Source: Stegostoma tigrinum
Lineage: Eukaryota
Assembly: GCF_030684315.1 (NCBI RefSeq)
Contig: NC_081396.1
Coordinates: 248,001-312,000 of the forward strand
Direction of reading: 5' to 3'
Length of the DNA stretch: 64,000 nucleotides
Each line of letters begins with the position of its first letter. Position 1 is the first letter of the stretch. A program made the position numbers and the translations under genes. The notes below the pieces were generated by a model. That model made no database searches, had not been told where the DNA came from, and was given only the letters and a program-made list of their open reading frames with translations. Below, piece by piece: positions 19,080 to 58,440 of the stretch.

Positions 19080-19800
19080 CTTTCTCAATCGCCACTTCTT
19101 ACACTCTGTAACACCACATTCAATTCATTTCCTCTTATGATCTCTCTCTGTCTATTACATTCCTTCCCTCGCTCCTGCTTTATAACACACTCCTCCGCTC
19201 CATTTCCTTCTCTACCTCACTGTCCTGTTGTGTACGACACACATTCAGCCTTGTTTCCCAGGTAAGAAACAACATTCCGCCCACTGCTCCCACAACTCAG
19301 CCATCGACAAACTCACTCTCAGAGAGGAATAGGTGATTCTCTTACCATGACACCGCAGTATATTTGAGTCAGCTCCTAAACACGGCCATTCTTTCTTTCT
19401 CTTTCTCTCCATCCGAAATCCGAAACCCTCTGTTCTCAGTATAATGTTCACACTCAATGACTGCAAGTAACGGCCTGGGCCTCTGTTTCCTGTTTTGTGA
19501 CTGTTCGCTTCTCTCTGATCAGTCATTGTCCAGGCAGCGTGTTTGCACAAAGTGCTGCCAGTGTCTGAGAGACAACTTCTACGCTGCGCAGGATCAGCTG
19601 GGACAGGAAGGAACAGGGAGAAAGGGGAATAAGGGAGGGAGAGAGAAAGGGAAGCAGGAAATAGAGTGGGAAAGGGACAGAGAGATACAGGAACAGATGT
19701 GGGGAGAGGGAGAGTGAGAAAGCAGTGAAGGTGGGGTGAGGGTGGAAGGCAGAAAGTATGGGGTGGCGAGGAAAGGAGAGGGAGGTGGGAGATGGCTCAT
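19080..19800 (+). promoter_or_regulatory. Paralogous non-coding module A (candidate enhancer; most diverged copy)
   Basis: Aligns by eye with modules B-D (ctcccacaa.tca.c.at; CTGTTTCCTGTTT 19483-19495; ctgtt.g.ttctctc). Also TGAGTCA at 19365-19371 and CAGCTGggaCAGGAAG at 19595-19610. Function is inferred. Confidence 0.45.
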
Positions 19801-20700
19801 GTACCCATGGCAGCCAGCCTGCTGGAGGAGAGAGGGTGGGAAAAATTATAGAGGATCAAAGTGAGTTTGGGGTGGGAGTCACTTTGGTGACTGTTTCCAT
19901 TCCTGCATGGATAGAATGAGGAGACAGGATGGTGGTTTGTGCACAGGCTCCAGTTTGACAGGGTGAGGCTTTTCACCTTTCTCATGGAATTTGAAGATCT
20001 CTTGCAACACAAGCATTGATTGCCCAATTCTAATTGCTCTTCATCGGTGGTTGTAAGCCTGCTGCTTAAGTCACTGCAGTCTATCTGGCACAAGTGTAAC
20101 CACAGAGCTGTGAGGGACACAAGCCCAGTTTTTCACCCAGTGATGGTGAAGGAACAGTTACAAACAATCCTGTATGATTTTTAGAGGAACATGCAGATGT
20201 TGCACTGGGGTGGATCTATGCAGCATGGAGAGTTTGGTGCATTGGGTGAGATTCCTAGGAGGGGGTTTTCCAGTGAGCAAGTTTCATAGCTGGCGTGGGG
20301 GTTGGAAATGTTTTAATGAGCATATTTAAACCTACAGCCACCCAAGACATTTGTGCATCTCTGATTTGAATTACTCCATCATCAATGCCGGGGACTTAAG
20401 CTGCAAGTCCCTCAGCTCTGGAGTTCCCTATTAATTCCTTTCTGCCGCTCAATCTCTCTTTCCTCCTTTCAGCTGCTCTATAAAGCTGACACCAGGCCTG
20501 TTATCTCCTCATGTGACTTGGTGTCATACTTGGCTTGAATTCCCTCCTCTGACTTGCATTGGAATGTTTCATTCAGCCAAAGGCTCTCGATGAAGGAGGT
20601 TGTTGTTGTACTTGTTCCAGATGTCTCAGTTTCTCATTTTTGAACATCGGCTCTTCCCTGATAGCTGCCTGGGAACTAATGAAGTGTAACCTGGGCTACA

Positions 20701-21362
20701 TCGGTGGCACAGTGGCTCAGTGGTTGGCACTGATGCCTCACAACGTCAGGGATCCAGGTTTGATTCTGGTGGTGACTGAATGGTATTATTGCTGGACTGT
20801 TAATCCAGAGACCCAAATAATGTTCTGGGGACATAGGTTCAAATCCTGTCATGGCAGATTGTGGAATTTGATCTGGAATTAAGAGTCTAATAATGATCAT
20901 GAAAGCATTGTCGATCATCCAAAAAACCCATTTGGATCACTCATGTCCTTTGGGGAAGAAAATTGCCATCCTTACCTGGTCTGGCCTACATGTAACTCCA
21001 GACTTTTAACTGCTGTCTGGGCATTTAGGGATGGGCAACAAATGCTGGCCTAGTCAGCGATGCCCTCATCCCATGAATGAATAAGGAAATAAAAGTTCCA
21101 CCCTTGGGTGACTCTCTGTGTGGAGCCTGTGTCTGCATGGGTTTCCTCTGGGTGCTGACAGTCCAAAGATGTGTAGGTTAGGTGGATGGGCCATGCTTAA
21201 GTTGTCAAGAATGCTCAGGGATGTGCAGGCTAGGTGGATTAGCCATGGGAAATGCAGGGTTACAATGATAGGTGGTTGGGTCTGGTTGGAATGCTCTTTG
21301 GAGGGTCAGTGTGGAAATGACGGGCCAAATGGCCTGCTTCCACAGTATTGGGATTCTATGAT
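20701..21362 (+). mobile_element. HE1-like V-SINE interrupted by a Deu/SacSINE1-like SINE (~20767-21094)
   Basis: HE1 head ends at ...ggtttgattc (20766) and resumes at ttccacccttgggtgac (~21096); the insert has its own tRNA-like head, central ccttacctggtctggcctacatgt.actccagac and LINE-derived tail ...atcccatgaatgaataa. Confidence 0.8.
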
Positions 21363-25560: not shown

Positions 25561-27209
25561 TTAAAAACAGTGAAGTACTAAAATGGATGGATTAAACAGC
25601 AGCAACTTAGGCACCAAACAAAAAAACATTGCCTGCTCAGTCTGTAGAACCCAAACATAATCTGACCTGCTTACACAAAGAGTTGGGATGCAGGGCATAG
25701 GTTGGGAATTTTTCAATAAAATAGACAGACCCTGGTCTGAACAAAGCCTGTCCTCCACGTACACGGCTCAAGTTTGGCATGTTATAGAATACTGTTCTCT
25801 TGCCTGGATGAGTGCAACTCCAACAACACTTAAAATTCAAAAACAAAAACAGAAATTACTGGAAAAACTCAGCGTGTCTGGCATTATGTGTGAAGAGAAA
25901 TCAGAGTTAACGTTTTGAGTCCGGTGACCATTCTTTAGAATTTAAAAACTCAATACCATTCTGAACCAAAATTCCCTGCTTGTTTGGCACCCCCTCCGCC
26001 ACAGTTTCTTGCTGCAGGATTCCTAGCTTCTGACATACTCTTGTAATTGCGGTATCTATAAGGCTGTTTCAGATCAGTTTCTGATCAATGCAACCTCCAG
26101 GATGTTGTTGCTATGGGATTCAGTGATGGTAATTTTTTTTCCAATTCTTACAGAAGATGTTAACATCCCTGCTCCGATCAGTATTTGTTGCCCTCGAACT
26201 GACTGGAGAAGGCATATCCGAGTCAAACAGGTTTCTACGGGTCTGGAGCCTATTGCAGGCCAGACTCTGAAATGTTGGCTGGTGTCTTTTCCTGGAGGAC
26301 ATTAGTGAACCTGATTGGTTTTTATGACAATCAATGCTGGTTACAGAGGTACATCAATCAAGCTTCTTTTTAATTCCAGATGGTATTGAATTCAAATTTC
26401 CACTATTTCTGACAGTGGGATTTGAAACGAGGTCCAAAGAATGTTACTTGTGGTCATGGATTTCTAACCAGCCAAAAATACCTTTTCCAACTACTTTTCT
26501 GCTGTGAATTGACAAAACTGACAAGATTTTCAAAAGAGCACATAATACTCAATCAGAACTCAGTCAGAACATTAGTGCATCACATGGAGGAGGTGGTGTT
26601 GTTGTGGAATATCACTTGATTTGTAATCCAGAAACCCAGGCTAACATTCTGTGGAAATAGGTTTGATTACAATAAAAAGCTGGAATAACAATCTGACCTA
26701 ATGATAACCAGATAACCACTTCTGACACGAAGTCCCACCTGGTTCACTAACGTCCTTTACGGAAGGAAGTCCGCCATCCGTACGTGTTCTGGATCACCTG
26801 TCACTCTGGATCCATGACAAAACGCTTGACTCTTAACATGATATAAGGAGGTGGAGTACATTATTTGACCCCTTAAGCATGCTCCACCATTCAATATGAT
26901 CATGGCTGATCATCCAACTGAGTACCCTGTTACTGCGTTGGTCCTATACCCTTTGATCCCTTCAGCACTCAGGATTTTATCTACCTCCTTCTCAAATACA
27001 TTCAATGTTTTGGCCTCAGTTGCTTTCTGGGGCAGAGAATTCCATTCGCTCACCAGTCTCTGGGGGAAGAAATCTCTTCCCATCACAGTTTGTAATGGCC
27101 TACGCAACATTCCGACTCTGTGACCTCTGGTTTGTGACTCACCGGTCATTGGGAACATTTATCTGCCTTTATCTTGTTGAGTGCTGTTCGAAGCTTAGAG
27201 ATAACACAT

Positions 27210-28230
27210 GTCATCCCTCCCATTCCTCTCCTATCTCTTTCCCACAGCATAATATACACTCACCCTTTATTCTATCCTGTCGCTCTCTTCACCTGCAATT
27301 CTGTTTAATCCCCTTTCCTTTTTTCCAATCCAGAAACACAATCCTCCCCAATTTTTCCTTCTTTTCACACACTCTCCCACTCTATCCTATGCCTCTGCTA
27401 TCACAGAGTCTGTGCATCTTTGCAGCTACAGCATTTTTTTTTGCAGTGAATGGAATTCAACACTGAGCAACAGAAACCTCTCACATATTTCACCCATCTA
27501 CAGATTCAGTACAGAGACAAATTCATCTTACCCACACAATCACTCATGAGAAACAACCTGGTCCTCTGCTTCCTGTTTTGAGCTGTTGGCTTGTCTGTGT
27601 CCACACAGTCTGTTTAGACAATGCGCAGTCAACCTGGAAGTGCAAGCATTTGCTTTTTTGCAGTGTCAGGAGGAAGGAGGAAAAAAAGCAGATGGGCGAG
27701 GGCACGGGGCAGTTTGCTTGATAAAAGTGAACCGATGTGCATGTCTGAACTACTGTGCAATGTTGGCTGTGAAGGAGGAGAGGAGAAAGGAAGGCAAAAG
27801 AGAGAGAGGTGATGAGAGGGAGGGAGAAAAGGTTGAGAACATCAAATGGGAGACAGAAGAAAAGAAAACGGACAGATATAAACAGAGTTGGGTCGAGGAA
27901 GAGAGAACTGTGTGATTGTGTACAGTAAGGACACAATATGAATTACTGTCTGTGTGGAGGTTGGAGTGGAGATTGGGATGGAAGGAAGGAGCAAAACAGA
28001 GAACACAAGGACATGAGAAATATGGGCAGGATGTGACCACTTTGAGCTTATCTGACTAATCATCAGGAACATGTTTGATGTTCTCCCAAAGCTCCAGCTT
28101 CTCACATCCCTTAATTTCCTTTGTACCAAAACCTAATCAAGATCTGTTGTGAATGTACTCAACAACTGAACCACAGTACTCAGGGGAAGAGAATTCAATA
28201 GATCACAGTCCATTGGGTGAAAAAATTTCA
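27210..28230 (+). promoter_or_regulatory. Paralogous non-coding module B (candidate enhancer)
   Basis: CTCATGAGAA 27543-27552, CTGCTTCCTGTTT 27566-27578, AGCTGTT 27581, AACCTGGAAGTGC 27631; pyrimidine-rich left flank, purine-rich right flank. Homology is seen directly; function is inferred. Confidence 0.5.
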
Positions 28231-28274
28231 AAATGGCATCTTCACTTGTAAGTCAGGCACACAGGATACTTTAG

Positions 28275-28667
28275 AGTTTAGAAGGATGAGAGGCGATCTG
28301 ATTGAGACGTATACGATTATTAAGGGATTGGACACTGTGGAGGCAGGAAGCATGGTCCAGGACCAGAGGACACAGTTTAAAAATAAGGGGTAGGCCATTT
28401 CGAACAGAGTTGAGGAAAAACGTCTTCGCTCAGAGAGTGGTGGATATATGGAATGCTCTGCCCCAGAAGGCAGTGGAGGCCAACTCTCTGGATACTTTCA
28501 AGAAAGAGATGGCGAGAGCTCTTAAAGATAGTGGAATCAAGGGTTATGGGGATAAGGCAGGAACAGGATACTGATTGTGGATGATCAGCCATGATCATAA
28601 TGAATGGTGGTGCTGGCTCGAAGGGCCGAATGGCCTACTCCAGCACCTCTTGTCTATTGTCTATTGT
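28275..28667 (+). mobile_element. CR1 3' fragment (different subfamily)
   Basis: SRTRGHSLKIRGRPFRTE.RKN.F.QRVV..WNALP; (tctattg)n tail. Confidence 0.88.
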
Positions 28668-30261: not shown

Positions 30262-30520
30262 CTCAGGAATAGGAAAGGTGAAATCACAATGCTCTAGGTG
30301 TATTACAGGCCTCCCAGCAGCCAGCAAGAGATAATGGACAGAATGTGCAGACAGACTTTGGAAAAATATCAAAACAGCAGGCTACTTTTGACTTCCCCGA
30401 TAGAACATAGAAAAGTACAGCACAGTAGAACATAGAACATAGAACATAGAACAGTACAGCACAGAACAGGCCCTTCAGCCCACAATGTTGTGCCGACCAT
30501 TGATCCTCATGGATGCACCC

Positions 30521-33418
30521 TCAAATTTCTGTGACCATATGCATGTCCAGCAGTCTCTTAAATGACCCCAATGACCTTGCTTCCACAACTGCTGCTGGCA
30601 ACGCATTCCATGCTCTCACAACTCTCTGCGTAAAGAACCTGCCTCTGACATCCCCTCTATACTTTCCACCAACCAGCTTAAAACTATGACCCCTCGTGCT
30701 AGCCATTTCTGCCCTGGGAAATAGTCTCTGGCTATCGACTCTATCTATGCCTCTCATTATCTTGTATACCTCAATTAGGTCCCCTCTCCTCCTCCTTTTC
30801 TCCAATGAAAAGAGACCGAGCTCAGTCAACCTCTCTTCATAAGATAAGCCCTCCAGTCCAGGCAGCATCCTGGTAAACCTCCTCTGAACCCTCTCCAAAG
30901 CATCCACATCTTTCCTATAATAGGGCGACCAGAACTGGACGCAGTATTCCAAGTGCGGTCTAACCAAAGTTTTATAGAGCTGCAACAAGATGTCACGACT
31001 CTTAAACTCAATCCCCCTGTTAATGAAAGCCAAAACACCATATGCTTTCTTAACAACCCTGTCCACTTGGGTGGCCATTTTAAGGGATCTATGTATCTGC
31101 ACACCAAGATCCCTCTGTTCCTCCACGCTGCCAAGAATCCTATCCTTAATCCTGTACTCAGCTTTCAAATTCGACCTTCCAAAATGCATCACCTCGCATT
31201 TATCCAGGTTGAACTCCATCTGCCACCTCTCAGCCCATCTCTGCATCCTGTCAATGTCCCGCTGCAGCCTACAACAGCCCTCTACACTGTCAACGACACC
31301 TCCGACCTTTGTGTCGTCTGCAAACTTGCTGACCCATCCTTCAATTCCCTCGTCCAAGTCATTAATAAAAATTACAAACAGTAGAGGCCCAAGGACAGAG
31401 CCCTGTGGAACCCCACTCACCACTGACTTCCAGGCAGAATATTTTCCTTCTACTACCACTCGCTGTCTTCTGTTGGCCAGCCAATTCTGTATCCAAGCAG
31501 CTAAGTTCCCCTGTATCCCATTCCTCCTGACCTTCTGAATGAGCCTTCCATGGGGAACCTTATCAAATGCCTTACTGAAGTCCATATACACCACATCCAC
31601 AGCTTGACCCTCATCAACCTTACTAGTCACATCCTCAAAAAACTCGATAAGGTTTGTAAGGCATGACCTACCCCTCACAAAGCCGTGTTGACTGTATTTG
31701 ATCAAGCCATGCTCTTCCAGATGGTCATAAATCTTATCCCTCAGAATCCTTTCTAACACCTTGCAGACGACAGACGTGAGACTTACCGGTCTATAATTGC
31801 CGGGGATTTCCCTATTTCCTTTCTTGAAGAGAGGAATTACATTTGCCTCTCTCCAGTCCTCAGGTACGACTCCAGTGGAGAGCGAGGATGCAAAGATCTT
31901 CGCAAGTGGCGAAGCAATTGCATTTCTCGCTTCCCAAAGCAGCCGAGGACAAATCTGATCCGGGCCTGGCGACTTGTCAATCTTAATGTTTGACAAAATT
32001 TTCAGTACATCAGCTTCCTCTATCTCTATCCATTCCAGCATGCACACCTGCTCTTCAAAGGTTTCATTCACTACACAGGTCGTTTCTTTCGTAAAGACAG
32101 AAGCAAAAAACTCATTTAGGGCTTCCCCTACCTCCTCAGGCTCCACACACAAGTTCCCTATGCTATCCCTGATCGGCCCTACTCTTTCTTTGACCATTCT
32201 CTTATTCCTCACGTAAGTGTAAAATGCCTTTGTGTTTTCCCGGATTCCTTCTGCCAAGCCTTTCTCGTGCCCCCTCCTGGCTCTCCTCAGACCATTTTTG
32301 AGCTCCTTCCTTGCCTGCATGTAATCCTCTCTAGCTGAACTTGACCCTAGCTTCCTCCACCTTATGTAAGCTACCTTCTTCCTTTTCACGAGAAGCTCCA
32401 CCGCTCTCGTCATCCAAGGTTCCTTTATCTTACCCCGTCTTGCCTGTCTCAGAGGGACATATTTACTCATCACTCCCAACAACTGTTCCTTAAACCATCT
32501 CCACATGTCTATAGTTCCCTTACCATGGAACAACTGCTCCCAGTCCATGCTTCCTAACTCGTGTCTAATCGCATCATAGTTTCCTCTTCCCCAATTAAAT
32601 ATCCTCCCATTCTGCCTAATCCTCTCCTTCTCCATAGCTATGTAGAATGAGAGAGTGTTATGGTCACTATCACCAAAATGCTCTCCCACCACAAGATCTG
32701 ATACCTGCCCCGGCTCGTTTCCGAGCACCAAGTCTAGAATGGCCTCTCCCCTCGTCAGCCTGTCAACGTACTGCGTTAGGAAACCCTCCTGAACACACCT
32801 AACAAAAACAGCTCCATTCAAATCTTCTGCTCGAAGGAGGTTCCAATCAATATTAGGAAAGTTAAAGTCACCCATTACAACAACCCTACTGCGTCCACAC
32901 TTTTCCAAAATCTGTCGACCTATGCTTTCTACAATCTCCCTGCTGCTATTGGGGGGCCTGTAGTAAACCCCTAACGAGGTGACTACTCCCTTGCTGTTCC
33001 TAATTTCCACCCATACTGACTCAGTAGGCAGATCTTCCTCGACAATGGAAGCTTCTGTAGCTGTGATACCCTCTCTGATTAGTAGTGCTACACCCCCTCC
33101 TCTTTTTCCCCCCTCCCTATTCTTTTTAAATGTTCTAAACCCTGGAATATCCAGCAACCATTCCAGCCCATGAGAAACCCATGTCTCTGTTATGGCCACA
33201 ACATCATAGCACCAGGTACTGATCCATGCTCTAAGTTCATCACTTTTATTCCTGATACTCCTTGCATTAAAGCAAACACACTTTAACCGATCCCTTGGTT
33301 CCTTCCCAGGAAAATCCTTCCCACTAGCTGGTCTACCTCTTGCTACTGCCTCACCTGCATCAACGCTCACCTCTGGTATACAGCTCAGGTTCCCACCCCC
33401 CTGCCATACTAGTTTAAA
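30521..33418 (-). CDS. CR1 ORF2: AP endonuclease plus reverse transcriptase (uninterrupted; no AUG before the endonuclease domain)
   Basis: CFNARSI, AITETW, GDFN, LDL, SDH (APE); KSPGPD, NYRPVSLTS, QHGF, DFSKAFD, PQGSVLGP, FADD (RT). The frame is open from a TTG at 33529; the start is drawn at the slippery site. Confidence 0.95.
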   Translation of the reverse strand, partial: FKLVWQGGGNLSCIPEVSVDAGEAVARGRPASGKDFPGKEPRDRLKCVCFNARSIRNKSDELRAWISTWCYDVVAITETWVSHGLEWLLDIPGFRTFKKNREGGKRGGGVALLIREGITATEASIVEEDLPTESVWVEIRNSKGVVTSLGVYYRPPNSSREIVESIGRQILEKCGRSRVVVMGDFNFPNIDWNLLRAEDLNGAVFVRCVQEGFLTQYVDRLTRGEAILDLVLGNEPGQVSDLVVGEHFGDSDHNTLSFYIAMEKERIRQNGRIFNWGRGNYDAIRHELGSMDWEQLFHGKGTIDMWRWFKEQLLGVMSKYVPLRQARRGKIKEPWMTRAVELLVKRKKVAYIRWRKLGSSSAREDYMQARKELKNGLRRARRGHEKGLAEGIRENTKAFYTYVRNKRMVKERVGPIRDSIGNLCVEPEEVGEALNEFFASVFTKETTCVVNETFEEQVCMLEWIEIEEADVLKILSNIKIDKSPGPDQICPRLLWEARNAIASPLAKIFASSLSTGVVPEDWREANVIPLFKKGNREIPGNYRPVSLTSVVCKVLERILRDKIYDHLEEHGLIKYSQHGFVRGRSCLTNLIEFFEDVTSKVDEGQAVDVVYMDFSKAFDKVPHGRLIQKVRRNGIQGNLAAWIQNWLANRRQRVVVEGKYSAWKSVVSGVPQGSVLGPLLFVIFINDLDEGIEGWVSKFADDTKVGGVVDSVEGCCRLQRDIDRMQRWAERWQMEFNLDKCEVMHFGRSNLKAEYRIKDRILGSVEEQRDLGVQIHRSLKMATQVDRVVKKAYGVLAFINRGIEFKSRDILLQLYKTLVRPHLEYCVQFWSPYYRKDVDALERVQRRFTRMLPGLEGLSYEERLTELGLFSLEKRRRRGDLIEVYKIMRGIDRVDSQRLFPRAEMASTRGHSFKLVGGKYRGDVRGRFFTQRVVRAWNALPAAVVEARSLGSFKRLLDMHMVTEI

Positions 33419-34335: not shown

Positions 34336-34536
34336 ACCCCACTTATCTGAACACCCACTCAATACAAAACCAGAAAGCTTACTTCAAGTAATAATAACAA
34401 ATTAATAACAAACTTATGTTCAATAGAGAAAGTTTAGAATGAACCTTACCTTATTAACTAGGTTAGAGGAGGAGGGCGGGTGGGAGACACTACAGTTGTA
34501 GAGTCTCGGGTTAAGCCGCCTTGCTGATATATATGG

Positions 34537-43470: not shown

Positions 43471-46400
43471 TGAATGGGATTATGAGAATACAGCCTGAGC
43501 TCACACATGATACATTCAACAGTGACTTGTTTGTGGGTACTCGCCCAAGTCTTCCTCGCTCTCAATGTATGCAAAAAATACCAGAGGTCAAAGATTTGGG
43601 CAATGCCAATCCTATGTGTGGAGAATTCCCACTTTCCTCCAGTCATGAAAAAGGCATCAATGACTATCTGAGTGTCAATTACCTGAAAACATTTCTGTAA
43701 TAACATATTAACTGCTTGATAATGTGAGTTACAGATAACAGATCAGTCAAAATCAAACTGCAAATTATTGGCGGAACATATAGAAAACAATGCAACAGTG
43801 AGAATTTCACCTCACTCATTTTGTTCATTCATTCATGAGGTATGTGTGCCACTGGCCAGGTCTGCATTTTTTGCCCATTCACAACTACCCTGCTTAAGGT
43901 AGTGGTGAGCTGCCTTCCTGAAGCATTTTTGGGCTGTAGGAGCATCTACACTGTTGTTTGGGAGGGAGTTCCAGGATTATGAGCCAGCAAAACTGAAGCA
44001 ACAAGAACAGATATCACAGTCAGGAAGGTGAGTGCCAAGGAGGGTAAGTTGTGTGTGTCAGTGCTTCCGTATACCTGTTGCCTTTGTCCTTCTCAGTGGT
44101 CAGCTTCACGTGCTTGGAAGATGATTACAGAGCAGCCTCTGGAAATTACTGTTCAGGTAATTTTCCTTGTCAAGACTGGCTCGTTGGCAGAATTACTGAG
44201 TTGGTTGAGTCCTGAAGGATATTGTTACGAGACTGGTCTGCGAGCAAAACAACAAGAGAAAAAAACATTTTTAATCTCTTCTTCACCAATCTGCCTTCCA
44301 CTTGTATATCTGTCCATGACAGTATTGGCAAGAGGGACCATCATGCAGTCTCTGTAGACCTAAATCTTGTCATCTGACATCAGTGGTGGGAAAACTACTA
44401 GAAGCAATTGAGGGACAGAATTACATCTGCACTTGGAGAGGCAGGGCTTAATCAAGAACAGTCAGCATGGTTTTGTTAAGGGAAGGTCATGTCTCTTCCA
44501 GTGTCTAAAATTTGCCATCCGCAAACTGGAGGAGCAGAACCTCATATTCCGCCTCGGGAGTCTACGGCCCGATGGCCTAAACATAGATTTTACCAGTTTC
44601 AAAATCTCCCCATCCCCAGCCTCATCCCATGACCAACCATCCCTCTCATCCCTGCCTCCTTGATCTGACTCAAACTGTCCAGGTGGAGTAGACTCGATGG
44701 GCCGAAAGGCTTTACTTACCCTCTGATGTCTTATGGTCTTATGTCTGACCAACTTGACTGAATTTTCTAAAACAGTGACCAGGTTTGCAGATGAGGGCAA
44801 TGCAGTTGACCCTGAGTTTTGTTGGACTTCCATGAGGTTTTTGCTGAGTCCCAAAAGCGAAGAGCTCATGGGATCCAAGGAAATTTGGCAAATTGGATCC
44901 AGGATTGTCTGAGTGGTGACCAATGGGAGGTTTTGTGACTGAGAGCCTGTGTCCAGTGGTTCTACAGGCATCGGTGCTGGGGCCCTTGGTACTTGCAGTA
45001 TATGTCAATGATTTTGACTTGAACTTAGGAGGGTTGTTCGGTAATTTCAAAGATGATACAAAAATTGGTGAGGTGGTAAATAGTGAGGAGAATAGTCTGA
45101 GATTCCGAAAGAATATGGATGGGCGGTCTGATGGCTGATCAGTGGCAAATGGAATTCATGAAGACATCAGATGTCGGGGAGGATTAGGCCATTCATCCAT
45201 TGAGTCTGCTCCCACTGTGTGCATCCACTCATGGTTGATTAGTTTCTTAACTCCATTCTCCTCCCATTCCCCATTATCTTTGATCCCCTTACTATTTATC
45301 ACTGTCTTAATGCGCTAAGTCACTTGGCCTTCTCAGCCTTTTGTGACAATCAGTTCCACAGATACACCAGACCCTGGCTCCACTACTGTCAACATCTTGC
45401 ATGTTACCACTGACCAGAAACTAACGTGAACTAGTCATGTAAACGTAGTGGCTACAAGGGCAGTCAGGGAAAGGAATCCTGCAGCTAGTCATTCATCTCC
45501 TGACTCCCCAAAGCCTGTGCACCATCTCCAATGCACAAACAAGTCATGAGTATGATGATGCATTGCAGATATTCTCCAAAGTTTCTGAGCCAGGACCTTC
45601 AAAACACACAACACTTCCATCTACTGTAATGGCAGACTGTGGATCGTGCTGGGTCATGTGGTTACAGAATGTGGCTGAATACAATTGTGCTCCTGATGAT
45701 GGATACACAGGACCATCACCACCTGCACATTTCCCTCTGAACCATGGAACACTCTGACTTGGAAATATTTTGCCATTCCCTCAAAATCCTGGAACTTCCT
45801 CCCAAATGGAATTGTGGATGCACCTACAGCACATAGACCACAGTAGTTCAACCAAGCAGCACACCATAACATTCTCAACCAAGCAATAAATAAAAACCAG
45901 AAGAACTGCGGATGCAGTAAATTAGAGACAAAAATAAAGATCGCTGGAAAAGCTCAGTAGGCCAAAGCATCACTCCATCCAAACTTTAACTTTGCTTTCT
46001 CTCCACAGATGCTGGCAAACCTGCTGAGCTTTTCGAGCAATTTCTATATTTGACAGGAGATGAATGTTCACCCAGCCAGGAAAGCTCAGGTATCATGAGT
46101 GTATTAAAAATAAAATGAGCTCACTTCTTCCATAATGGATAGAGGATGGAGATACTTGTGGAGCCTTTATATCATGTTACTACTTCAATTGTCCACTGCT
46201 ATTCATGACTGGATGTAGCAGGACTGCAGAGCTCGGATCTGAAACCTCTGTTGTGATGTCTCTCAGCCCAGTGAACAGAATTCTCCTGCTGCTGTTTGGC
46301 ATGCCCTGTATTCCTATTTTGCAGTTTTGCCAAGCTGACTCCTTGTCTTTAGGCATGTCTAAGTCTGCTTCTGGCAGGCACTCCTACACTCTTCACTGAA

Positions 46401-46762
46401 CCAGGATTATTCTCCCAGTTTGATGTTAATGTCAGAGTGAGGAATGTTCCGGGCCATGCAGGTACACATTGTGGCATAATACAATTCTGCTGCTGGTTAA
46501 GGCCTACAACACCTCATGAATGCCAGTTTAGAAACGCTACGTCTAAATTCTGTTGCAATTCAAACCGTGGTGGTGTCATGCAACACAATGCAGAGGGGAT
46601 TGCCAATGTGAAGATAGGACTTTGTCTTCACAGTGAATGTTCAGTGTTCACTCTTAGTGATACTGTCACCATCAGATGCATGCAGGAAGATCAGCGAGGA
46701 TAAAGTCAAGTGGATATCTGTCTCTTGCTGGGACCCTCACAACCTAACACAGACCCAGGCTG

Positions 46763-47597
46763 CATGTCACACAGAGTGCTGCGGTAGGAGAGTACAATGA
46801 AAGAGGAAAGGGAGAGATGAGTTAGAAAATAAAGGGAAGAACATTGGATGTGAACAAAAGCAGGGATTTGAACAAAGGCAATTAAATGGTATGGCTGTGC
46901 TCTGACATGAGAATGCAGCCAGGCTTGTCTTGCTGGTGGACTTTGAAGTCCTGCACCCAGGCTACATTCTGTTTCCTTGCCACCCTGAGCACTTCCTCCA
47001 AGTTGTGTTCAACCTTGAAAAGAACGAAATCACCTGCTGAGGAACTGACGGTAGCTTTTACACTGTAGGTCTTACAAAAGCCCCGAGTTGGTGAGGAGAA
47101 CTTTGCAACATCCACAGAACTGTGTTTCCTGTTTTTGTTTGCCAGGACCTGGGATGATGCTAAACGGTCTTTCCATTATCCTTCCTTTCTTTAGAAAGTG
47201 TATTGGTTGATACAACTGAGTGTCTTGCTTGTATATTTCATAGGGCATTGAAGAGGCAACCACATTGCTGTGTGTCTGGAGTCACGTGTGGGTCAGACCA
47301 TGTGTACATGGCAGATTTCCTTCCCTGAAGGACATTAGTGAGCTAGAGAGATTTTTTTTGGGACAATCAACAATGTTTGGCCATTAGGGGAGTTTTTAAC
47401 TCAGATTTCATTTTATTAAATAATGAAAAATTAATTTCATTTTAATTCATTGTCTCGCTCACAGCCAATACCATTTAACTGCCTTTGTTCAAATCCCTGC
47501 TTTTATTCACATCCTATATTCTTCCCTTTGTTTTCTAATTCATCTCTTCCTTTCCCCTTTCATTGTACTCTCCTACCGCAGCACTCTGTGTGACATG
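46763..47597. repeat. Inverted repeat with ~137-bp arms (46763-46899 and 47460-47597) and a 560-bp spacer
   Basis: The outer 41 nt (catgtcacacagagtgctgcggtaggagagtacaatgaaag) are a perfect reverse complement; the rest has scattered mismatches. Confidence 0.92.
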
Positions 47598-48390
47598 TGG
47601 ATACTGCATTTTTCTCAAACATTAGAATCTGTTACTGACCAACAGAAACCCCTCCCACAATTCACCAATTTACGATTTCAGTACAGAAACAAATTAATGG
47701 TTCCCTTACACAGTCCACTGCTCATGAGAAGTAGTCTGTTCTCCTGCTTCCTGCTTCAAGCTGTTTGTTTCTCTCATCAGTCACGTTTCCTCGCAGACTG
47801 TTTATACGATGGACAGTCAAACTGGAAATGCCAGCTTCTGTACAGTATCCGGATGGAGGCGGGAGACAGTGGGAAAGGCTGCAGACTTCTTGGGTCATAC
47901 AAAGTGAGCATGTGATACCCAACAGTGTCCTGTGTCCCTGTGCAGGGCTGGTAGGGAAGGAGGAGAGAAAATGAAAAGTTAAAAAAAAGAGAGTTTGAAA
48001 GTGTCACATGAGAAAGTTAGGAGCGAGAAACTGGGAGAGGCATGGAGAGAGTTGCGCTCAGGGAGAGGCCATGTCCATTTGTACACAGTGCAGCCAGCAT
48101 GTGAATATAGCTTCTGTACGTATGGAGGACGAAGTGAGGAGAGGGATGGAAGGAGGAAGAAAAAGTGAAAATAAAGACTTCAGAAATATGGGCAGGAGCT
48201 TTGAGCTTCTTTCACTCTTCAGCAAGGACACATGTTTGACCTTCTCCTGAAACTCCATCTTCTCACATTATCATCACATCCTTTCATTCCCAAAAACCTA
48301 CCAAAACATACCTTGATTATTTCCAGTGACTGATAATCCACAGCACTGTGTTGTTAAGAGTTGGAAACTACCCTTTGAGTGAAAAAAAAA
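47460..48390 (+). promoter_or_regulatory. Paralogous non-coding module C (candidate enhancer)
   Basis: CTCATGAGAA 47721-47730, CTGCTTCCTGC 47744-47754, AGCTGTTTGTTT 47759, AAACTGGAAATGCCAGCT 47819; pyrimidine and purine flanks. Function is inferred. Confidence 0.5.
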
Positions 48391-51009
48391 TCTTGTGATC
48401 TGAGTCCAAAATGACCAAATGCTTATTCAAGCCTTGTGAATCTCAGTTCTGGATTTACCAAACAACACTAACATCACCTCCAACATCCATCAAAAGCCTT
48501 ATGAATTTCATGTGCCAGTAGCTAGAGGTGGTGCTCTGGAAGCCAGTGGCCCTCCTACAGGGACCTGCTCCACTTACAGCATCCTATAGCTGGGTAAGCA
48601 AGGTTCCCTTTGCTGAGAGGGGAGCTTGTGTACGCCTGGCCTCCTGACAGAATATTGTTTCAGTGCTTTTGGCTGAATACTGTTGCAAATACTTCAGCCT
48701 TATAGTTTGCACTGGTGACCTGGGCATCCCATTATGGGGGAGTGTGTGGAGTCTCCTCCTGTCTGCAATTGTTCAGCTGATCATCGCCATGAACAACTGA
48801 ATATGGCAGGACTACAAACATTCGATTTGTCCCACTTGCTGAAGTCATGCCTGGCATATCAAAAGATGGTTGTGCCTTTTGGAGGCCAGTCATCACAGCT
48901 CCAGGACATCTCTGCAGGAGTTCCTCAGGGTAGCGACCTATGCACCAGCACCTGTAACTGCTTCTGCAATGACCTTTCCTTCATCATAAGTTTAGGAGTG
49001 GGGATGTTCATCAATTTATTGCACAATGTTCGGCACCATTCATGATTCCTCAGATATTGAAGCAGCTCATGTTCACATGCAACAAAATCTGGACAACATC
49101 CAGGTTTGGACTGACCAATGGCCACGAACATTCCTGCCACACTTTGCCAAGTAATGATCATATCCAACAAAGAAAATGCAACCATCACCTCTTGTCATTC
49201 AATGGCGTTACTAACACAGAATGCAACACAATCAACAGCCTGGAGGTTACTATTGACCAGAAACTCGCCATATCAATGTAATGGCTACAATAGCAGGTCA
49301 GAGGCTGGGGAAACTGCAGCGAGTAACTCATGTCCTGAAATAATTCCACAGAGGCCAGTATCCTGTCACGAAGTCACCGTTTATGTACATGTGATGCATC
49401 CTTGACACTAATCCAACTTCTGCAGAACTGCCCTCAGAGTGAACAGAACCTCTGACACTCATATTTATTTATTTATTTATTTTTCTTTGCCATAAATGAG
49501 CAAGGCCTGAGAAGGGTAATACCTACGTGGGAGAAAAACAAAAGTGATGGGGAAAGGTAAGTGTGAATTGAAAATAGAGTTGGAGGGGGAAATACTGCAC
49601 TACACCCCTTACAATTCTTACCTCTCCAGTAAGGCACATTGGTCGACCCCGCGTGTTCCCGCACCTAGGACACCCAGGCTCAAACGTGACCACAGAAAAT
49701 AACTCCTGTTTATGTCTGTCAAACTGGGCCCCCAATAGGACCTGAATAAGAGCTCGAATGAACTAACTTGTGTTCTGAAAGGTCCACCTGGCTAACATCA
49801 CAACAATTACTGCATCTCCCACCGATCCCAAGTCCAAGCATATCGGCCCTTTTTTTTTTGTAGCTTCTCCCGTGGCACTTTATCACCGGGTCAGGTTCCT
49901 CCAGTCTGTCTCAAACATGGGCAGCATGTAACACACAGTAGCTCACTTCTTGTACTCAGAGTATCTCAGAAGAAATTCATTCTCCTCGAGGTGGCGACAT
50001 CTGCTGTGTCCATTTAGATTTTGAAGGATCTTCAATGCTTGACAGAGAGAGAAAACCCATGGGTTCCAGAGCAGTCAGAAAAGCAGTTGAGGGATTGGAA
50101 CGTTTTGATCCAGCTTTTGCAAGTTTGCAGCTTTTATATGTTTCACGTGCTTGTTCGGGACTGTCACACCTATCTGGGCTTTTTACATCATTCGACCTCA
50201 CTTTGCGTTGATCATGCCTCTTACCCACGCAGTGGCCATCCCATGGCTCTGACACAAAACGTCTTCCTCCGAAGTAAACTGTCTCTATCATTTAATGGAG
50301 TCTGGTGTCTGGCATTGGTGTTCCAGATCTTGGTTCACCCTTGATGCCAGGTCTGGGAAGATCAGATTGAACCTGATTCTTTCCATTAGCAACTCCGTTG
50401 CACCTATCCTTGCAGTTGCATGAGGGATGATCCTGTCATCAAGTAGGAACCGGGACAGTTCAGAACCCAGTGAATCTGCATGCTGTTTCTTTAAGTGCTT
50501 TCAAAGTTTGGTCTGCTCTTTTGACCAAATCATTGGATGATGGATAGTATGGAGTTGTCCTTATATGACAATTACCATTGCCTTTAGGGAATGCTCAAAT
50601 TCCCTGCTGGTAATCAATACCCATTTTTTATGACCAACACGTTCAGGATTCTGTGTATCTCAAAAAATGCACTCTTGGTGCTGCCCCATCAATACAACTG
50701 TGTTCTGCATCCAGTCCTGGCCACTAGACATAATTTCCATCTAATATCTTCATTTTGGAAACCCCTGGATGACTCTGATGGCATACAGACAGTATCTGTA
50801 TCCTCAACTGTGATCTGATCTTTCCGGGTCCAAAAAGTTTCAACTCTGGTTTTGATGGCCCTTTGGATTCCCCCATCTCAACCAACTGGTTAAGTTTTGC
50901 CAGGGCTGGATCTTTTTGTGTTCAATGTCTGATATTGTCAGTTATGACTGGAAGTATGTCTGGAAATTTTAAAACCATTACGGCCTCTTCCACTGGCATT
51001 CCCACCGGT

Positions 51010-54000: not shown

Positions 54001-54435
54001 TACAAGAGCCTACTGTGGGGAACCTTATCGAGCACCTTGCTGAAATCCATATACACCACATCAACCGTTTTACTCTCATCTACCTGTTTGGTCACCTTCT
54101 CAATGAACTCAATGAGGTTTGTGAGGCACGACCTTCCCTTCACAAAACCGTGCTGACTATGAGGGGACATTGTTTTAAAGTGAGTGGAGGTAGATATAGG
54201 GGAGACATCAGAGGTAGTTTTTTTAAGTCAGAGAGTGGTAGGGGCATGGAATGCATTGCCAGAGAGGGTAGTGGAGTCGGCCTCATTGGGGGCATTTAAG
54301 CAGCTATTAGACAGGCAAATGGATGATAGTATAAAGTAGGGGTGGAGGTTAGGTAGACCTTAGGTTTTGGGTAAATGTTCGGCACAACATCTTGGGTCAA
54401 AGGGCCTGTACTGTGCTGTAATGTTCTACATTCTG
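51010..54435 (+). mobile_element. Decayed + strand CR1 ORF2 hosting a mini Penelope (51754-51907) and a younger CR1 (52885-54160)
   Basis: VVVMGDFN...SDH, PGNYRLVSLTS; 3' UTR matches 11150-11270; Penelope TSD aaggaaaactccaag at 51739-51753 and 51908-51922. Confidence 0.88.
52885..54160 (-). mobile_element. 5'-truncated CR1, same subfamily as 22123-23413
   Basis: RT and 3' UTR sequence closely similar to 22123-23413; (catagaa)n tail. Confidence 0.92.
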
Positions 54436-57400
54436 TGATGCAACTGCCAGCAGGAGGTAGTCCAATGCATCCACAATTGCTACCTGGGCTCTTGGTGTTC
54501 CAACTTGTAATTATATGTGCTTAGCATGACAGCCCACTGCTGAATTTGGCCTGAAGCCGTAAATGGCCCTGCAATGTCCTCTTTAAGTAGAACTTGCTGG
54601 AGTTTGTGATCTGTTATTAATCCAAATATGCATCCATAAAAGAATTGGTGGATCTTCCTGACTCCAAATATGACCTTCAATCCTTCCTTCTCTACATAAG
54701 CATATTTTCGCTCTGCATCAGCCAATGTTCTGGATGCATAGGTTATGGGGGTTCCTCTCTACTGGGCCACCATGAAGGCACTTCATATCAATACCAGGTC
54801 TCACTAGGTATCACAGTTTTCTAGCATCTTAGAGGGTGAGAGCTGTTTCTTCACTTCCCTGAAAGCTATGCCTTGGCAATGCAATCATTTCCAAGGCTTA
54901 CTCTTTCTTAAGAGTTGATGCATAGGTGCCAGGATGGAGGCCAGGTTATGTCTGAACTTTCCATAATTATTCACTAGCCCAAGGCAAGACCTAATTTCCG
55001 ATAAGGATGTGGGAGCCAGGGTACTTCTGGTCACTCTCACTTCATCTTCCAACAAGTATAACCCAGTCTTGTCGACTCTGTAGACCACGTAGGTTCATTG
55101 GGGTGCCTGGAACACACATTTATCCCTTCTCAGGCATTTGTCTGCCTGGGAGAAATGTCTAAGGACTTTATTCAAGTTCTCTCATGCTCCTTATTGGTCT
55201 TCACTGTTTGTTATTAGCGCGTCATCTGGGCATATGGTGATTTGGGGTAGACCTTGTAAAATGTTCTCCACCATCTGCTGAAAAATTGTACAGTTTGACA
55301 ATACCTCAAATGGCAGGCTTGTATGTTGTTACAACCCCTTCTGTGTCTTAATTGCAGCACACCTCTGGGAATCCTCATCTAACCTCATTGTAAATACACA
55401 TTGCTCGTGTCCAGCTTAGTGAAGGACAGCCTCCCTGCCAGCTCTGTGTAGAAATCCTCAAATTTGAGGGACAGGGAATTTATCCAGATGTTAAAATCGT
55501 TTAGAATTTCCACAAAGATGAGCAATCAGTATGACCAATGCTGCCCATCCCACAAACTGAACCAGTTTGACAATTCCTTCATTTTCCAGCCTTCTGATTT
55601 CTGCCTCTACTTTTTCCCGTACATGAAATGGCATTGGGCAGGCCTTGTTGAATCATGAAATTGCTTCCTGGTCACATCACTCCTTTGAGAGTATTGAGAC
55701 CTTCCTGAAAAACATCTGGGTATTTAATTAAGACTTCACTCAGGTGGCAATATGTTGAAGTTGAAAAATGTTTGGATAATCTCGGTGAATCTTGCTCAGC
55801 CAATTTTGCCCCCTCAAGATTGGGCCCGAGCTTTTTACTATAATCGTTGGTAACTGAATCAGCTGCTTCTTGTAGTTTAATTTGTAAAACAATGGATAAA
55901 TATTTCCTGGTTTAGTTTCTCATTCTAGCCGCTATCGGCATAAAATTAAGAGCTGTAGTCCAGAGTGAAGTTTGTTGAAGATCTGTTGTGCAGTCACTCA
56001 AACAGTTACATTGGTATTGACCTTCATTAGAAAGGGGTACCCATTTATTTGGATTGATTCTGATATGGATGTTGTGAACAAATTTAACTGTTTAAAGCAG
56101 ATGTGGGTGTACTTTCCAGGGTGTGCATTCTCCTGGATACTGGTTTACGAGTTCTCTTACTCAGATTAGGTCCTGTGGGACAGTTTTGCTGTCTCGATTC
56201 CAAAATAACCACAATGGCTTGCTGACCCAGCTCCTGAAGAAAATTTTAACAATTTGGCTGAGGCTTGTTTTGTTTTGGGGTTTTGCTATGGGATGACCTA
56301 AAGTCCCTCTGTTCAGGACATAAACACGCAGTTATTATGAGAGACAGAGACTGAGTTCACACCTGAAAATAATGAACTATATGACTTCATGCTATGATGA
56401 TGTGTGACTTGCAGGGGCCATGTCATTGTTTGTCTTTCTGTGCAGCTGTTGTCCTTGTTAACCCAACTGGTGGAGGTTTCAGTTTTGGGAGGTGCCATCG
56501 AAGAAAGTTTGATGAGTTACTGCAGCGCATCTTGGAAATGTCCACAGTAAATGTTTGAGGTGGGAGCACTGGAGCTGATTAAACACGGAGCAAATGCAGG
56601 AGCAGAAATTGTGTGAAGTTCCCAGTCCTGTGCCAGGCCAATTCTGTTGCTGTAGTTGGCCCACAATGCCTCACGTATATCCAGTCTCGAATTGCTGGAT
56701 CTGTTCGAATTGTGTTCCCTTTAGCACGGAGATAGTGGCCATACAACATGAAAGAGGGTGTTCCCAATGTGAAGGCAGGACTTCTTCTCAGTTCCACAAG
56801 GACTGTGCGGTAGTCATTTTTACTGATACTGTCACAGACAGATGCATTTGCAGCAGGCAGTTTGGAGTCAAGGAGGTTTTTCTCTCTTGTTAGTTTCATC
56901 ACCACCTGTTGCAGACCCAATCGAGAAGCTGTGTCATTTATGACCTGACCAGCTCGATCAGTCGTGCTGCTGCTGAGGACATTGAAATATACCAAGCAGT
57001 GTACATTGTATACCCTTGGCATGCACAAGTGTTATTCCACATGGAAGAAGACTGATTCAGCAGAGGAGGGATGACTCCCAGGGCAACTCCCTCCACTATA
57101 CTGCTGTGCTACCTCCTCTGCTGAGTTTGTATTGCCAGAAGGACAGAATATATCCAGGGAGTGTGATGGTTGTGTCTGGGACATTGTCTGTAAGGTATGA
57201 TTCTTTGAGTATGACGAGGTCAAGCTCTTACTTGACTTGTCTGTCAGATAGCTCTCCCAATTTCTGCACTAATCCCCACATGTGAGTGGAGAGGACTTTA
57301 CATCTTCAACAGGGCTCTTTCTTTTCTTTTGCAATGCAGAGGTTGATCCCAGGAACCGACAATGGAGAACACAAGCCAAATCTAGATATTCAAGGGAAAA

Positions 57401-57589
57401 CAACTTTGGGTCAATTAGTGGGGGATTTTTACTGTCATATATGACTGAAGTACGAATTAATAAATTGAGGTGTAAATCTCAGACCAGAGATGTCTCATCA
57501 CATGAGAAACTGCACCTCAAACTGCTTTGGAAAATCCAGGTCATGCACTGCACAACCAGACTGTTTTCAACTCTTTCTTGTCATCATTG

Positions 57590-58440
57590 AATTTCTTTGT
57601 CTCCTACACTTTGTCTTTTCCCTTCTGATTCACCTTTTCACTTGTTAGCGCATGACACCTCAATTCCTACTCTTTCTCTTTCCCATTTTATAACATAGTC
57701 TTACCCTGTACTTTCTCTTTTTCTCTCTGCATGCAGCTCCATTTAACTCCCTTTCCACTAAATTGAGTCTCGCTCCCACTCCAGAACATAATCTGCCTTA
57801 TTTTCTCCTCACCCTTTATGACTCTGTACTTTCCTGTTTATCACAGCGGTCTATGTATCATGCAGCTGCAGCATTTCTCCCAGGCAACAGAATCCATTAC
57901 AGACCAATAGAAACTCCTCCCAGCCCTGTAGTCACCCATCTATAAATTCAATGTACAGAGCTACACACTCAGTTGCTCATGAGAAACTGCCCATTCATCT
58001 GCTTCCTGTTTAGAGCTGTTTGTTTCTCTCTCTCAGCTGATTTTCAAGTCTGTCAGTTTAAACAATAGACAACCTGGAAATGCCAGCTGCTGTTTCTGTG
58101 CACTATGGAGAGGGAGGAGGGAGAAAGTGAGACTACGGACCTGGCCGTCTGTACATTGTGCACCACATTGTGAATTACAGCTCTGTCTGTGTGTAGGACT
58201 GAGTGGGATGCAGCCAGCCACTGATTCCTTTCAAGTTTGTTCCACTTTTTAAAAAGGACTTGTTTAATTTTTCTTGAATCTCTGCTTCTCACACTACCAT
58301 CACATCCCTTAATACTTTTCATACTCATGAGCCGATTGAGATCATCTTGAATACACTTAATGACTGAGAATACACAGCACACTTTGGAAGAGAACTGAAA
58401 ATATCAGAACACTATAAATGAAGACTTTGCTCCTCATCTC
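57590..58440 (+). promoter_or_regulatory. Paralogous non-coding module D (candidate enhancer)
   Basis: CTCATGAGAA 57976-57985, CTGCTTCCTGTTT 57999-58011, AGCTGTTTGTTT 58014, AACCTGGAAATGCCAGCTG 58071; three CAGCTG E-boxes (~57863, 58034, 58084). Function is inferred. Confidence 0.5.

What the first reader, a model, noticed from the sequence alone, without database searches (positions are those of the whole stretch)
19080..58440. Four dispersed paralogous non-coding modules 3' of IgW: candidate cartilaginous-fish IgH 3' enhancer cluster
Seen: four co-oriented ~0.7-1 kb homologous blocks (A 19080-19800, B 27210-28230, C 47460-48390, D 57590-58440), about 13, 21, 41 and 52 kb past TM2, are almost the only sequence here that I cannot assign to a TE. 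Flanks are strongly diverged, yet B, C and D keep CTCATGAGAA exactly 23 nt (start to start) before CTGCTTCCTG, AGCTGTT exactly 15 nt after that, and then AA(C/A)CTGGAA(A/G)TGC. A keeps the ETS/CTGTT part. B, C and D also share an ancient CR1 3'-end relic at the same position (from ~28015, ~48180, ~58200), so they arose by duplication of a genomic segment. Established: CAGGAAG is an ETS site, (T/A)AAACAGGAAG a FOX:ETS composite, CAGCTG an E-protein box, and CTCATGA the mammalian VH-promoter heptamer; teleosts have an enhancer 3' of mu TM2 and mammals a multi-element 3' regulatory region. From memory, the minus strand of C (CAGCTtgaaGCAGGAAGCAGG) resembles the muE2-muA stretch of mouse Emu. Inference: a multi-module B-cell enhancer built by duplication and spread apart by TE insertions; I know of no description in sharks.
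Basis: partly seen in the sequence, partly recalled or inferred. Interest (0 to 1): 0.82.

Follow-up and report, generated by a model that had tools for sequence, protein, structure and literature searches.

The report
Old duplicated non-coding blocks downstream of IgW
Four old, same-direction copies of a roughly 1 kb non-coding segment really do lie downstream of a shark antibody heavy-chain gene, but every test I could run fits slowly decaying duplicates rather than a conserved B-cell enhancer cluster, and that idea still needs chromatin data.

Summary
B (27202-28260), C (about 47400-48474) and D (about 57610-58520) are homologous at 63-66% over 0.5-0.9 kb. A (19154-19560) is a weaker, colinear, more diverged copy. 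The composite motif string occurs with zero mismatches in B, C and D and nowhere else in the window.

All three blocks end in the same reverse-oriented CR1 3' fragment.

The enhancer reading gains no support:
- The central 260 bp is only slightly better kept between copies (0.69-0.76) than the dead CR1 tail (0.53-0.67), and the "core" is no better kept than its neighbours.
- A is uniformly more diverged and does not keep the core specially.
- In a related species, block C is single-copy and its left 592 bp (head, core and first sub-repeat) is 91.9% identical, inside the range of the flanking pieces (87-94%).
- Only two GGAA cores and a CTCATGAG palindrome are conserved in position. There is no octamer, canonical E-box, kappaB or ETS-IRF site.
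- No RNA or chromatin data could be reached.

Best reading: roughly neutral relics of an old local duplication, or less likely of a low-copy composite repeat.

The parts
19154..19560 (+). Block A. This is the most diverged copy, holding head, pre-core and core. A CT-rich insertion of about 110 bp lies at 19335-19445, and a purine-rich stretch follows to about 19800.
   Evidence: nhmmer with the B/C/D profile: 19446-19560 at E 3e-9 and 19154-19333 at E 0.0055, colinear. Identity to B/C/D is 0.56-0.63 in the pre-core and 0.56-0.70 in the core.
27202..27984 (+). Block B, the part that is not CR1: CT-rich head, central conserved 260 bp (27425-27680), then three purine-rich sub-repeats of about 150 bp.
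27985..28260 (-). Block B tail: a 5'-truncated CR1 relic on the minus strand, with a decayed 3' microsatellite, the 3'UTR and the ORF2 C-terminus. It is cut on the right by a plus-strand CR1 relic that starts at 28268.
27543..27587 (+). Motif string in B: CTCATGAGAA-N13-CTGCTTCCTG-N5-AGCTGTT. The minus strand carries CAGGAAGCAG.
47399..48165 (+). Block C, the part that is not CR1. The head is partly lost next to a high-copy repeat at 47167-47363. The motif string is at 47721-47765.
48166..48474 (-). Block C tail: the reverse CR1 relic (FFFTQRVV..., then MLVLFGKSRTEIH).
57609..58199 (+). Block D, the part that is not CR1. About 400 bp of the sub-repeats are deleted. The motif string is at 57976-58020.
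58200..58520 (-). Block D tail: the reverse CR1 relic (IFSSLPKCAVYSQSLSVFK, upstream EMRSKVF).
   Evidence: tblastn E 0.01.
46759..46903 (-). A young inverted copy (93.5% identical) of 138 bp of block C's head (47460-47597).
   Evidence: In the related species the piece is missing: contigs join 46761 to 46900 with 20 other letters between (table 5c).
1511..3282 (+). Context: the last two Ig heavy-chain C1-set exons (1511-1897 and 2881-3282, the second with a secretory tail). The TM1 exon is at about 5170-5275.
   Evidence: Pfam C1-set, E 3e-10 and 7.5e-19.

Best explanation
The four blocks are old paralogous copies of one composite non-coding unit of about 1.1-1.3 kb. The unit has a CT-rich head, a central stretch of about 260 bp and one to three purine-rich sub-repeats of about 150 bp. 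It is joined to the 3' end of a 5'-truncated CR1 that lies in reverse orientation.

Most likely the unit was multiplied locally at the DNA level, by tandem or segmental duplication through unequal exchange or replication error. The copies were then pushed 8-20 kb apart by later CR1 and other insertions. Since then they have decayed at close to the neutral rate.

On this reading the shared motif string with fixed spacing is leftover identity in an indel-free stretch of copies that are still about 70% alike. It is not a selected set of factor-binding sites.

Shown: the homology, the shared CR1 junction, co-orientation, the repeat-rich intervals, single-copy status and flank-level divergence in a related species.
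Inferred: the mode of duplication and the absence of function.
For: (1) B, C and D share both the unknown part and the same reverse CR1 fragment at the same junction. The profile tail also hits independent CR1 relics.

(2) All four copies are co-oriented within 40 kb. A profile search of the whole window finds no other copy apart from a young 138-bp inverted copy of C's head.

(3) Homology stops at the block edges. The intervals between blocks are 64-81% repeated within the window and include a full-length CR1 at 30.4-35.4 kb.

(4) In a related species, block C has single-copy word depth (20-27, against 1e3-6e5 for neighbouring repeats). One contig covers 47318-47909 with 48 differences in 592 bp, which is 91.9%. 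The flanking pieces run 87-94%, and five of the seven give about 8.2% pooled.

(5) The copies differ by about 35%, against about 8% between the two species, so the duplication is several times older than the species split.

(6) Identity between copies is broadly even: centre 0.69-0.76, dead CR1 tail 0.53-0.67. A is lower throughout, core included.

(7) Nothing points to coding or structured RNA. B has an in-frame stop and A has no ATG. Pfam, the protein word search, Rfam and tRNA scans gave nothing relevant.
Against: The central 260 bp is about 10 points better kept than the CR1 tail. This is clearly significant only for B-D, at z about 3.5 (my arithmetic from the counts).

The two invariant 10-mers are somewhat more than column shuffling gives: P 0.0016 for both runs and 0.04 for the best 60-column window. 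Both figures are post hoc.

B, C and D are about equally distant from each other. That star-like pattern fits a burst of transposition as well as it fits rapid duplication.

No genome-wide copy count was possible, and no chromatin, methylation or RNA data could be read for these places.
Confidence: 0.6

Rival explanations
1. The blocks are copies of an old, unclassified composite interspersed repeat. This would be a non-autonomous element whose consensus already contained a rearranged CR1 piece, or a CR1 copy that carried downstream flank with it. The copies inserted independently and happen to be co-oriented.
For: B, C and D are nearly full-length, have a common left end in B and D (27202/57646), and are about equally distant from each other. 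The region is full of CR1 relics. Old families at about 35% pairwise divergence would be invisible to the 80%-likeness read laying.
Against: No terminal inverted repeats, poly-A tail, tRNA-like head or target-site duplications were seen. The CR1 piece points the wrong way for a SINE-type tail. Four co-oriented copies lie in 40 kb and none in the other 24 kb. There are no copies at 80% or above in either species. No predicted protein anywhere shares words with the block ORF, which is weak evidence. Carrying of 3' flank is not established for CR1-type elements (my knowledge).
Confidence: 0.22
2. The central stretch of each block is a B-lineage enhancer module bound by ETS-family factors, and together the modules form a 3' regulatory region for the IgW cluster.
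For: The blocks lie 13-52 kb 3' of the membrane exons. CAGGAAGCAG occurs at the homologous place on the minus strand of B, C and D; the window holds four matches in all, against 0.28 expected, but the three block sites are one event copied three times. A second GGAA(A/G)T is also conserved in position. The centre is modestly slower than the CR1 tail. No shark IgH enhancer appears in the papers searched, so nothing rules it out.
Against: Against the related species there is no excess conservation. Copy A is uniformly more diverged, core included. There is no octamer, conserved E-box, kappaB or ETS-IRF composite, and the supposed E-box is CAGCTC or CAGCTT. The core is no better kept than the 100 bp on either side. 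A GGAA core is too common to carry weight. The resemblance to mouse Emu was recalled from memory and was not tested.
Confidence: 0.1
3. The blocks are promoters or exons of an unannotated non-coding transcript family. The conserved pyrimidine tract followed by CAG would be a 3' splice site, and D has TATAAAT about 30 bp before a TCAGTT initiator-like site.
For: A pyrimidine tract followed by CAG sits at the homologous place in A, C and D. The TATA-like sequence in D is at 57941.
Against: B has lost the tract. The TATA-like sequence is not kept in B or C. No RNA run holding this stretch was found. Such short signals are common by chance.
Confidence: 0.05

Closest known systems
Old segmental or tandem duplicates of intergenic DNA, later split up by retrotransposon insertions
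   Same: The copies are co-oriented and clustered. They share an arbitrary junction between unrelated sequences (an unknown part plus a reverse CR1 fragment). Their divergence is even and near neutral, and the intervals between them are repeat-rich.
   Different: Only about 1.1-1.3 kb per copy is still alignable. One further piece is shared by C and D (46482-46757 vs 56639-56919), but it belongs to a repeat family also present at 44162-44366. The original size of the unit is unknown.
Mammalian IgH 3' regulatory region (hs3a, hs1,2, hs3b, hs4)
   Same: It lies 3' of the last heavy-chain constant gene, has several modules, and some of those modules are duplicates of one another (hs3a and hs3b).
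   Different: The mammalian modules are defined by B-cell hypersensitive sites and reporter activity. They carry octamer, kappaB, E-box, Pax5 and ETS/PU.1 sites and sit in a palindromic arrangement (my knowledge; review PMC9936319). Here the copies are direct, only GGAA cores are kept, and activity is untested.
Teleost Emu3' enhancer (catfish, zebrafish), between mu TM2 and delta
   Same: It is an enhancer placed 3' of the membrane exons in a fish heavy-chain locus.
   Different: It is a single compact element within a few kb of TM2 and depends on E-box and octamer motifs (my knowledge, not checked here). The shark blocks lie 13-52 kb away and lack both motifs.
Unclassified ancient interspersed repeats that contain LINE-derived pieces
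   Same: Length about 1 kb, internal degenerate tandem sub-repeats, an embedded CR1 fragment, and about 35% divergence between copies.
   Different: No dispersed copies could be shown, no terminal hallmarks were found, and all copies are local and co-oriented.

Membership tests
IgH 3' enhancer / 3' regulatory region | Lies 3' of the last constant-region or membrane exons of a heavy-chain gene | tested here: met
   C1-set exons are at 1511-1897 and 2881-3282, and the TM1 exon is at about 5170-5275. The blocks lie at 19-58 kb. The isotype (IgW) was not tested independently; it rests on unchecked scan notes.
IgH 3' enhancer / 3' regulatory region | B-cell-specific open chromatin, active histone marks or hypomethylation | not testable with these tools
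   Only bisulfite runs were available, and at 1-in-100 sampling they gave 0-2 reads per site. No ATAC or ChIP data were reachable.
IgH 3' enhancer / 3' regulatory region | Enhancer activity in a reporter assay or in a deletion | not testable with these tools
   This needs an experiment.
IgH 3' enhancer / 3' regulatory region | A cluster of lymphoid factor sites (octamer, E-box, kappaB, PU.1/ETS-IRF, Pax5) conserved across copies | tested here: not met
   Only CAGGAAG, GGAA(A/G)T and the CTCATGAG palindrome are conserved in position. No octamer, kappaB or GGAAnnGAAA occurs in any block, and no CANNTG is kept at a homologous place. Pax5 was not scanned.
IgH 3' enhancer / 3' regulatory region | Sequence conservation above the neutral level | tested here: inconclusive
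   Between species: 91.9% over 47318-47909 against 87-94% in the flanks, at too coarse a resolution to see a 60-bp core. Between copies: centre 0.69-0.76 against CR1 tail 0.53-0.67. A shows no sparing of the core.
Segmental / tandem duplication | Copies share an arbitrary junction of unrelated sequences | tested here: met
   B, C and D have the same junction between the purine-rich sub-repeats and the reverse CR1 3' end.
Segmental / tandem duplication | Copies are clustered and co-oriented | tested here: met
   Four plus-strand copies lie within 19-58 kb and no others are in the window.
Segmental / tandem duplication | Colinear homology runs beyond a single element | tested here: inconclusive
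   Only C and D share another piece (46482-46757 vs 56639-56919, 65%), and it belongs to a repeat family. Nothing extends at the block edges.
Interspersed repeat (transposable element family) | Many dispersed copies genome-wide | tested here: inconclusive
   Block C is at single-copy depth at 80% likeness or more in a related species, and depth is low in the same species. Copies more than 20% diverged would not be seen, and no genome search was possible.
Interspersed repeat (transposable element family) | Terminal hallmarks (TIRs, LTR ends, poly-A or microsatellite tail, tRNA-like head, target-site duplications) | tested here: not met
   No tRNA-like sequence was found. No terminal inverted repeats were found beyond low-complexity CT/GA matches. 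The only LINE tail present points inward.

The most novel reading that the evidence does not exclude
The central stretch of about 260 bp in each block, which carries two conserved ETS-type GGAA sites, is a B-lineage enhancer. The four copies would then form the first described 3' regulatory region of a cartilaginous-fish heavy-chain cluster, built by duplication as the mammalian hs3a/hs3b pair was.
Probability: 0.1. Interest if true: 0.8.

Novelty: new member of a known kind. Interest (0 to 1): 0.25.

Why it matters
No transcriptional enhancer has been defined for any shark immunoglobulin cluster, in the papers I could search or to my knowledge. How each of the many small clusters is switched on, and how one is chosen per B cell, is an open question. 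A real 3' enhancer array would make that question testable.

The evidence here says these blocks are more likely ordinary old duplicates. They should not be treated as candidate enhancers until chromatin or methylation data single them out. The refined coordinates and the 260-bp centre give a precise target for that check.

Tried and rejected
(1) The block as a CR1 with a very long 3'UTR. Rejected: the decayed (ATAGAAC)n-like CR1 terminus lies at about 27985-28015, next to the sub-repeats, so the other 780 bp lie outside the CR1.

(2) The block as a signal-peptide or leader exon, or as a V-gene relic. C and D read MRSSLFSCFLL... and MRNCPFICFLF..., but B has a stop after 11 codons and A has no ATG. 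Pfam found nothing and the protein word search found nothing. No Ig exon relic lies near any block.

(3) LINE 5'UTR promoter monomers. The block profile does not hit the 220-bp CR1 monomers at 34537-35386 or any other CR1 5' end.

(4) SINE or structured RNA. ARAGORN found nothing, and Rfam gave only chance matches below threshold.

(5) Foldback or TIR element. Only low-complexity CT/GA complementarity was found.

(6) Exact look-up of ten block ORFs in the protein collection: none found. My references included the stop codon, and some ORFs start at TTG or GTG, so this blank means little.

(7) Methylation from the bisulfite runs: too few reads.

(8) No RNA run holding the stretch was listed, so expression could not be tested.

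(9) The scan's earlier notes by sequence: blank.

Full report
**Context**

The window opens inside an immunoglobulin heavy-chain gene on the plus strand. Two C1-set exons lie at 1511-1897 and 2881-3282 (Pfam E 3e-10 and 7.5e-19; atlas neighbours are all C1-set). The second exon ends in a secretory tail. A membrane exon reading ...AFAILFILSFLYSTFVTVVK lies at about 5170-5275. I did not test the isotype; unchecked scan notes call it an IgW minilocus and place another IgW cluster about 146 kb past the window's end. No further Ig exon relics occur in the window. The rest is rich in CR1, including a full-length minus-strand element at about 30.4-35.4 kb with an intact 1002-aa ORF2 and 3.9 copies of a 220-bp 5' monomer.

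Yes.
- BLAST with relaxed scoring aligns B to C over 27341-28225 vs 47518-48387, at 62.8% over 919 columns.
- B aligns to D over 27202-27686 vs 57646-58126 (64.6%) and again at 28102-28205 vs 58300-58406.
- C aligns to D over 47447-47874 vs 57716-58132 (63.2%) and 48204-48367 vs 58234-58401.
- D has lost about 400 bp of the purine-rich middle.
- A profile built from B, C and D and run over the whole window with nhmmer recovers those three. It also finds a young inverted copy of part of C and two colinear pieces of A: 19446-19560 (E 3e-9) and 19154-19333 (E 0.0055). It finds nothing else for the part that is not CR1.
- The composite pattern CTCATGAGAA-N13-CTGCTTCCTG-N5-AGCTGTT occurs with zero mismatches at 27543, 47721 and 57976. 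No other site matches even with three mismatches allowed, and chance expectation is 0.
- A carries CAGGAAA and CTGTT at the homologous place.

**Anatomy of the unit**

Each full copy has four parts: a CT-rich head, a central stretch of about 260 bp (B 27425-27680), two or three degenerate sub-repeats of about 150 bp, and a tail. The sub-repeats have the form TGTACAAAGTG...CTGTGCAG...GGAGGGAGG.

The tail is a CR1 fragment on the minus strand. Translated in reverse it reads FFFTQRVVSNS*QHSAVDYQSLEIIK...FLGMKG in C and IFSSLPKCAVYSQSLSVFK in D, which matches the C-terminus of CR1 ORF2. The tail part of the profile hits three other reverse CR1 relics in the window. At its left end the tail aligns with the (ATAGAAC)n terminus of the young CR1 copies.

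This also rules out my first alternative, that the whole block is a CR1 with a long 3'UTR.

**Is it a high-copy repeat?**

Not at 80% likeness or above. I laid the contigs of two runs of a related species (coded organism B) and raw bisulfite reads of the same species (organism A) on 45000-50900.
- In the relative, block C sits at word depth 20-27. That equals the depth of single contigs, while neighbouring repeats reach 1e3 to 6e5 (table 2).
- One contig in each run covers 47318-47909, which spans part of the head, the centre and the first sub-repeat. It has 48 differences and 2 gaps in 592 bp, or 91.9% identity (table 8).
- Contigs of similar depth in the flanks give 92.7, 91.8, 88.7, 93.7, 89.8, 86.6 and 90.4%.

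The orthologue therefore exists and is single-copy. It has diverged as much as its surroundings: about 8.1%, against about 8.2% pooled over five of those flank pieces. The copies differ from each other by about 35%, so the duplication is several times older than the split of the two species. Copies more than 20% diverged would escape this test, so an ancient dispersed family is not excluded.

**Is the core under constraint?**

Only weak hints.
- Pairwise identity by segment: head 0.46-0.63, pre-core 0.69-0.74, core 0.69-0.76, post-core 0.64-0.76, purine-rich part 0.60-0.68, CR1 tail 0.53-0.67.
- The whole centre is about ten points above the dead CR1 tail. By my arithmetic from the counts, this is clearly significant only for B-D (z about 3.5, against 1.7-1.8 for the other pairs). 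The low-complexity head and purine-rich parts align poorly anyway.
- Column shuffling gives P 0.0016 for two invariant runs of 10 and P 0.04 for the best 60-column window. Both figures are post hoc.
- BLAST had found only the core in A. Once A's 110-bp insertion is allowed for, A turns out to be uniformly more diverged: pre-core 0.56-0.63 and core 0.56-0.70. An older copy that had kept the core while losing the rest would have been good evidence for selection, and that is not what is seen.
- The between-species figure cannot resolve a 60-bp element, so modest constraint is not excluded.

**Motif content**

CAGGAAGCAG lies on the minus strand at the homologous place in B, C and D. The window holds four matches against 0.28 expected, but the three block sites are one event copied three times. 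A second GGAA(A/G)T and the 8-bp palindrome CTCATGAG are also conserved in position.

No block contains an octamer, a kappaB site or a GGAAnnGAAA composite, and no CANNTG box is kept at a homologous place. The likeness to mouse Emu was recalled from memory and I could not test it; a shared GGAA-centred 10-mer is weak evidence.

**Other readings tested**

- Coding: C and D read as signal-peptide-like ORFs from the ATG inside CTCATGAG, but B has a stop after 11 codons and A has no ATG. Pfam finds nothing, and the protein word search found no relative of the 106-aa ORF of C.
- RNA: Rfam and ARAGORN give nothing meaningful.
- Transposon ends: no terminal inverted repeats beyond CT/GA low complexity.
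- Splice site or promoter: a pyrimidine tract followed by CAG is kept in A, C and D, and D has TATAAAT about 30 bp upstream of TCAGTT. Neither is kept in all copies, and no RNA run holding the stretch was listed.

**Duplication or transposition?**

In favour of local DNA-level duplication:
- all four copies point the same way and sit within 40 kb;
- there is none in the other 24 kb of the window;
- the CR1 piece points inward, which fits no SINE-like or LINE-like design;
- no terminal hallmarks were found.

In favour of a mobile composite element:
- three copies are nearly full-length;
- B and D share a left end (27202/57646);
- homology stops at the block edges;
- B, C and D are about equally distant from each other.

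The one extra piece shared by C and D (46482-46757 vs 56639-56919) belongs to a repeat family also present at 44162-44366, so it settles nothing. The intervals between blocks are 64-81% repeated within the window, leaving 1.9-3.6 kb of other sequence each. The copies could therefore once have been close together. I favour local duplication over a mobile element by roughly two or three to one.

**Comparison with what is known**

The mammalian 3' regulatory region and the teleost Emu3' enhancer are the nearest functional analogues. They share only the position 3' of the membrane exons and, for the mammalian hs3a/hs3b pair, the theme of duplicated modules. Their defining features are B-cell hypersensitivity, reporter activity, and octamer, E-box and kappaB sites. 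Here those features are either untestable or not met.

The papers I could search hold no description of a shark heavy-chain enhancer.

**Verdict**

The blocks and their shared motifs are real, and they arose by copying a segment that already held a CR1 fragment. Nothing available indicates that they are more than slowly decaying duplicates. The enhancer hypothesis remains possible at about 10% and is cheaply testable with the existing bisulfite data at full depth or with ATAC-seq.

They are unchecked and are not independent support.

Noticed in passing
window 46759-46903 (minus) and 47460-47597: A 138-bp piece of block C's head has a 93.5% identical inverted copy about 600 bp upstream. In the related species the copy is absent: contigs join 46761 to 46900 with 20 other letters between. 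It is therefore a lineage-specific local inverted duplication of about the age of the species split.
   Followed up: partly
window 26846-27131 and 28362-28648: Block B is bracketed by two old CR1 3' relics in opposite orientation (69% over 287 bp). On a dot plot this looks like a pair of terminal inverted repeats, but it is two separate CR1 insertions.
   Followed up: partly
window 30438-35388 (minus): A full-length CR1 with an intact 1002-aa ORF2 (30521-33529), an (ATAGAAC)7 terminus at 30400-30453 and 3.9 copies of a 220-bp 5' monomer that are 99% alike (34537-35386). It looks young and possibly active.
   Followed up: no
window 45985-46181 and 47167-47363: Two short stretches reach summed word depths of 2e5-6e5 in the related species' contigs. 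They are very high-copy short repeats shared by both species.
   Followed up: no
window 46463-46750, 56639-56919, 44162-44366 (minus): An unclassified old repeat family (about 65% alike) has one copy 0.6-0.75 kb upstream of block C and one upstream of block D, in the same orientation. Whether they were part of the duplicated unit is open.
   Followed up: partly
window 5170-5275 (plus): A membrane (TM1) exon of the heavy-chain gene reads VEDMDGDDNALTVAAFAILFILSFLYSTFVTVVK, about 1.9 kb past the secretory-tail exon.
   Followed up: no
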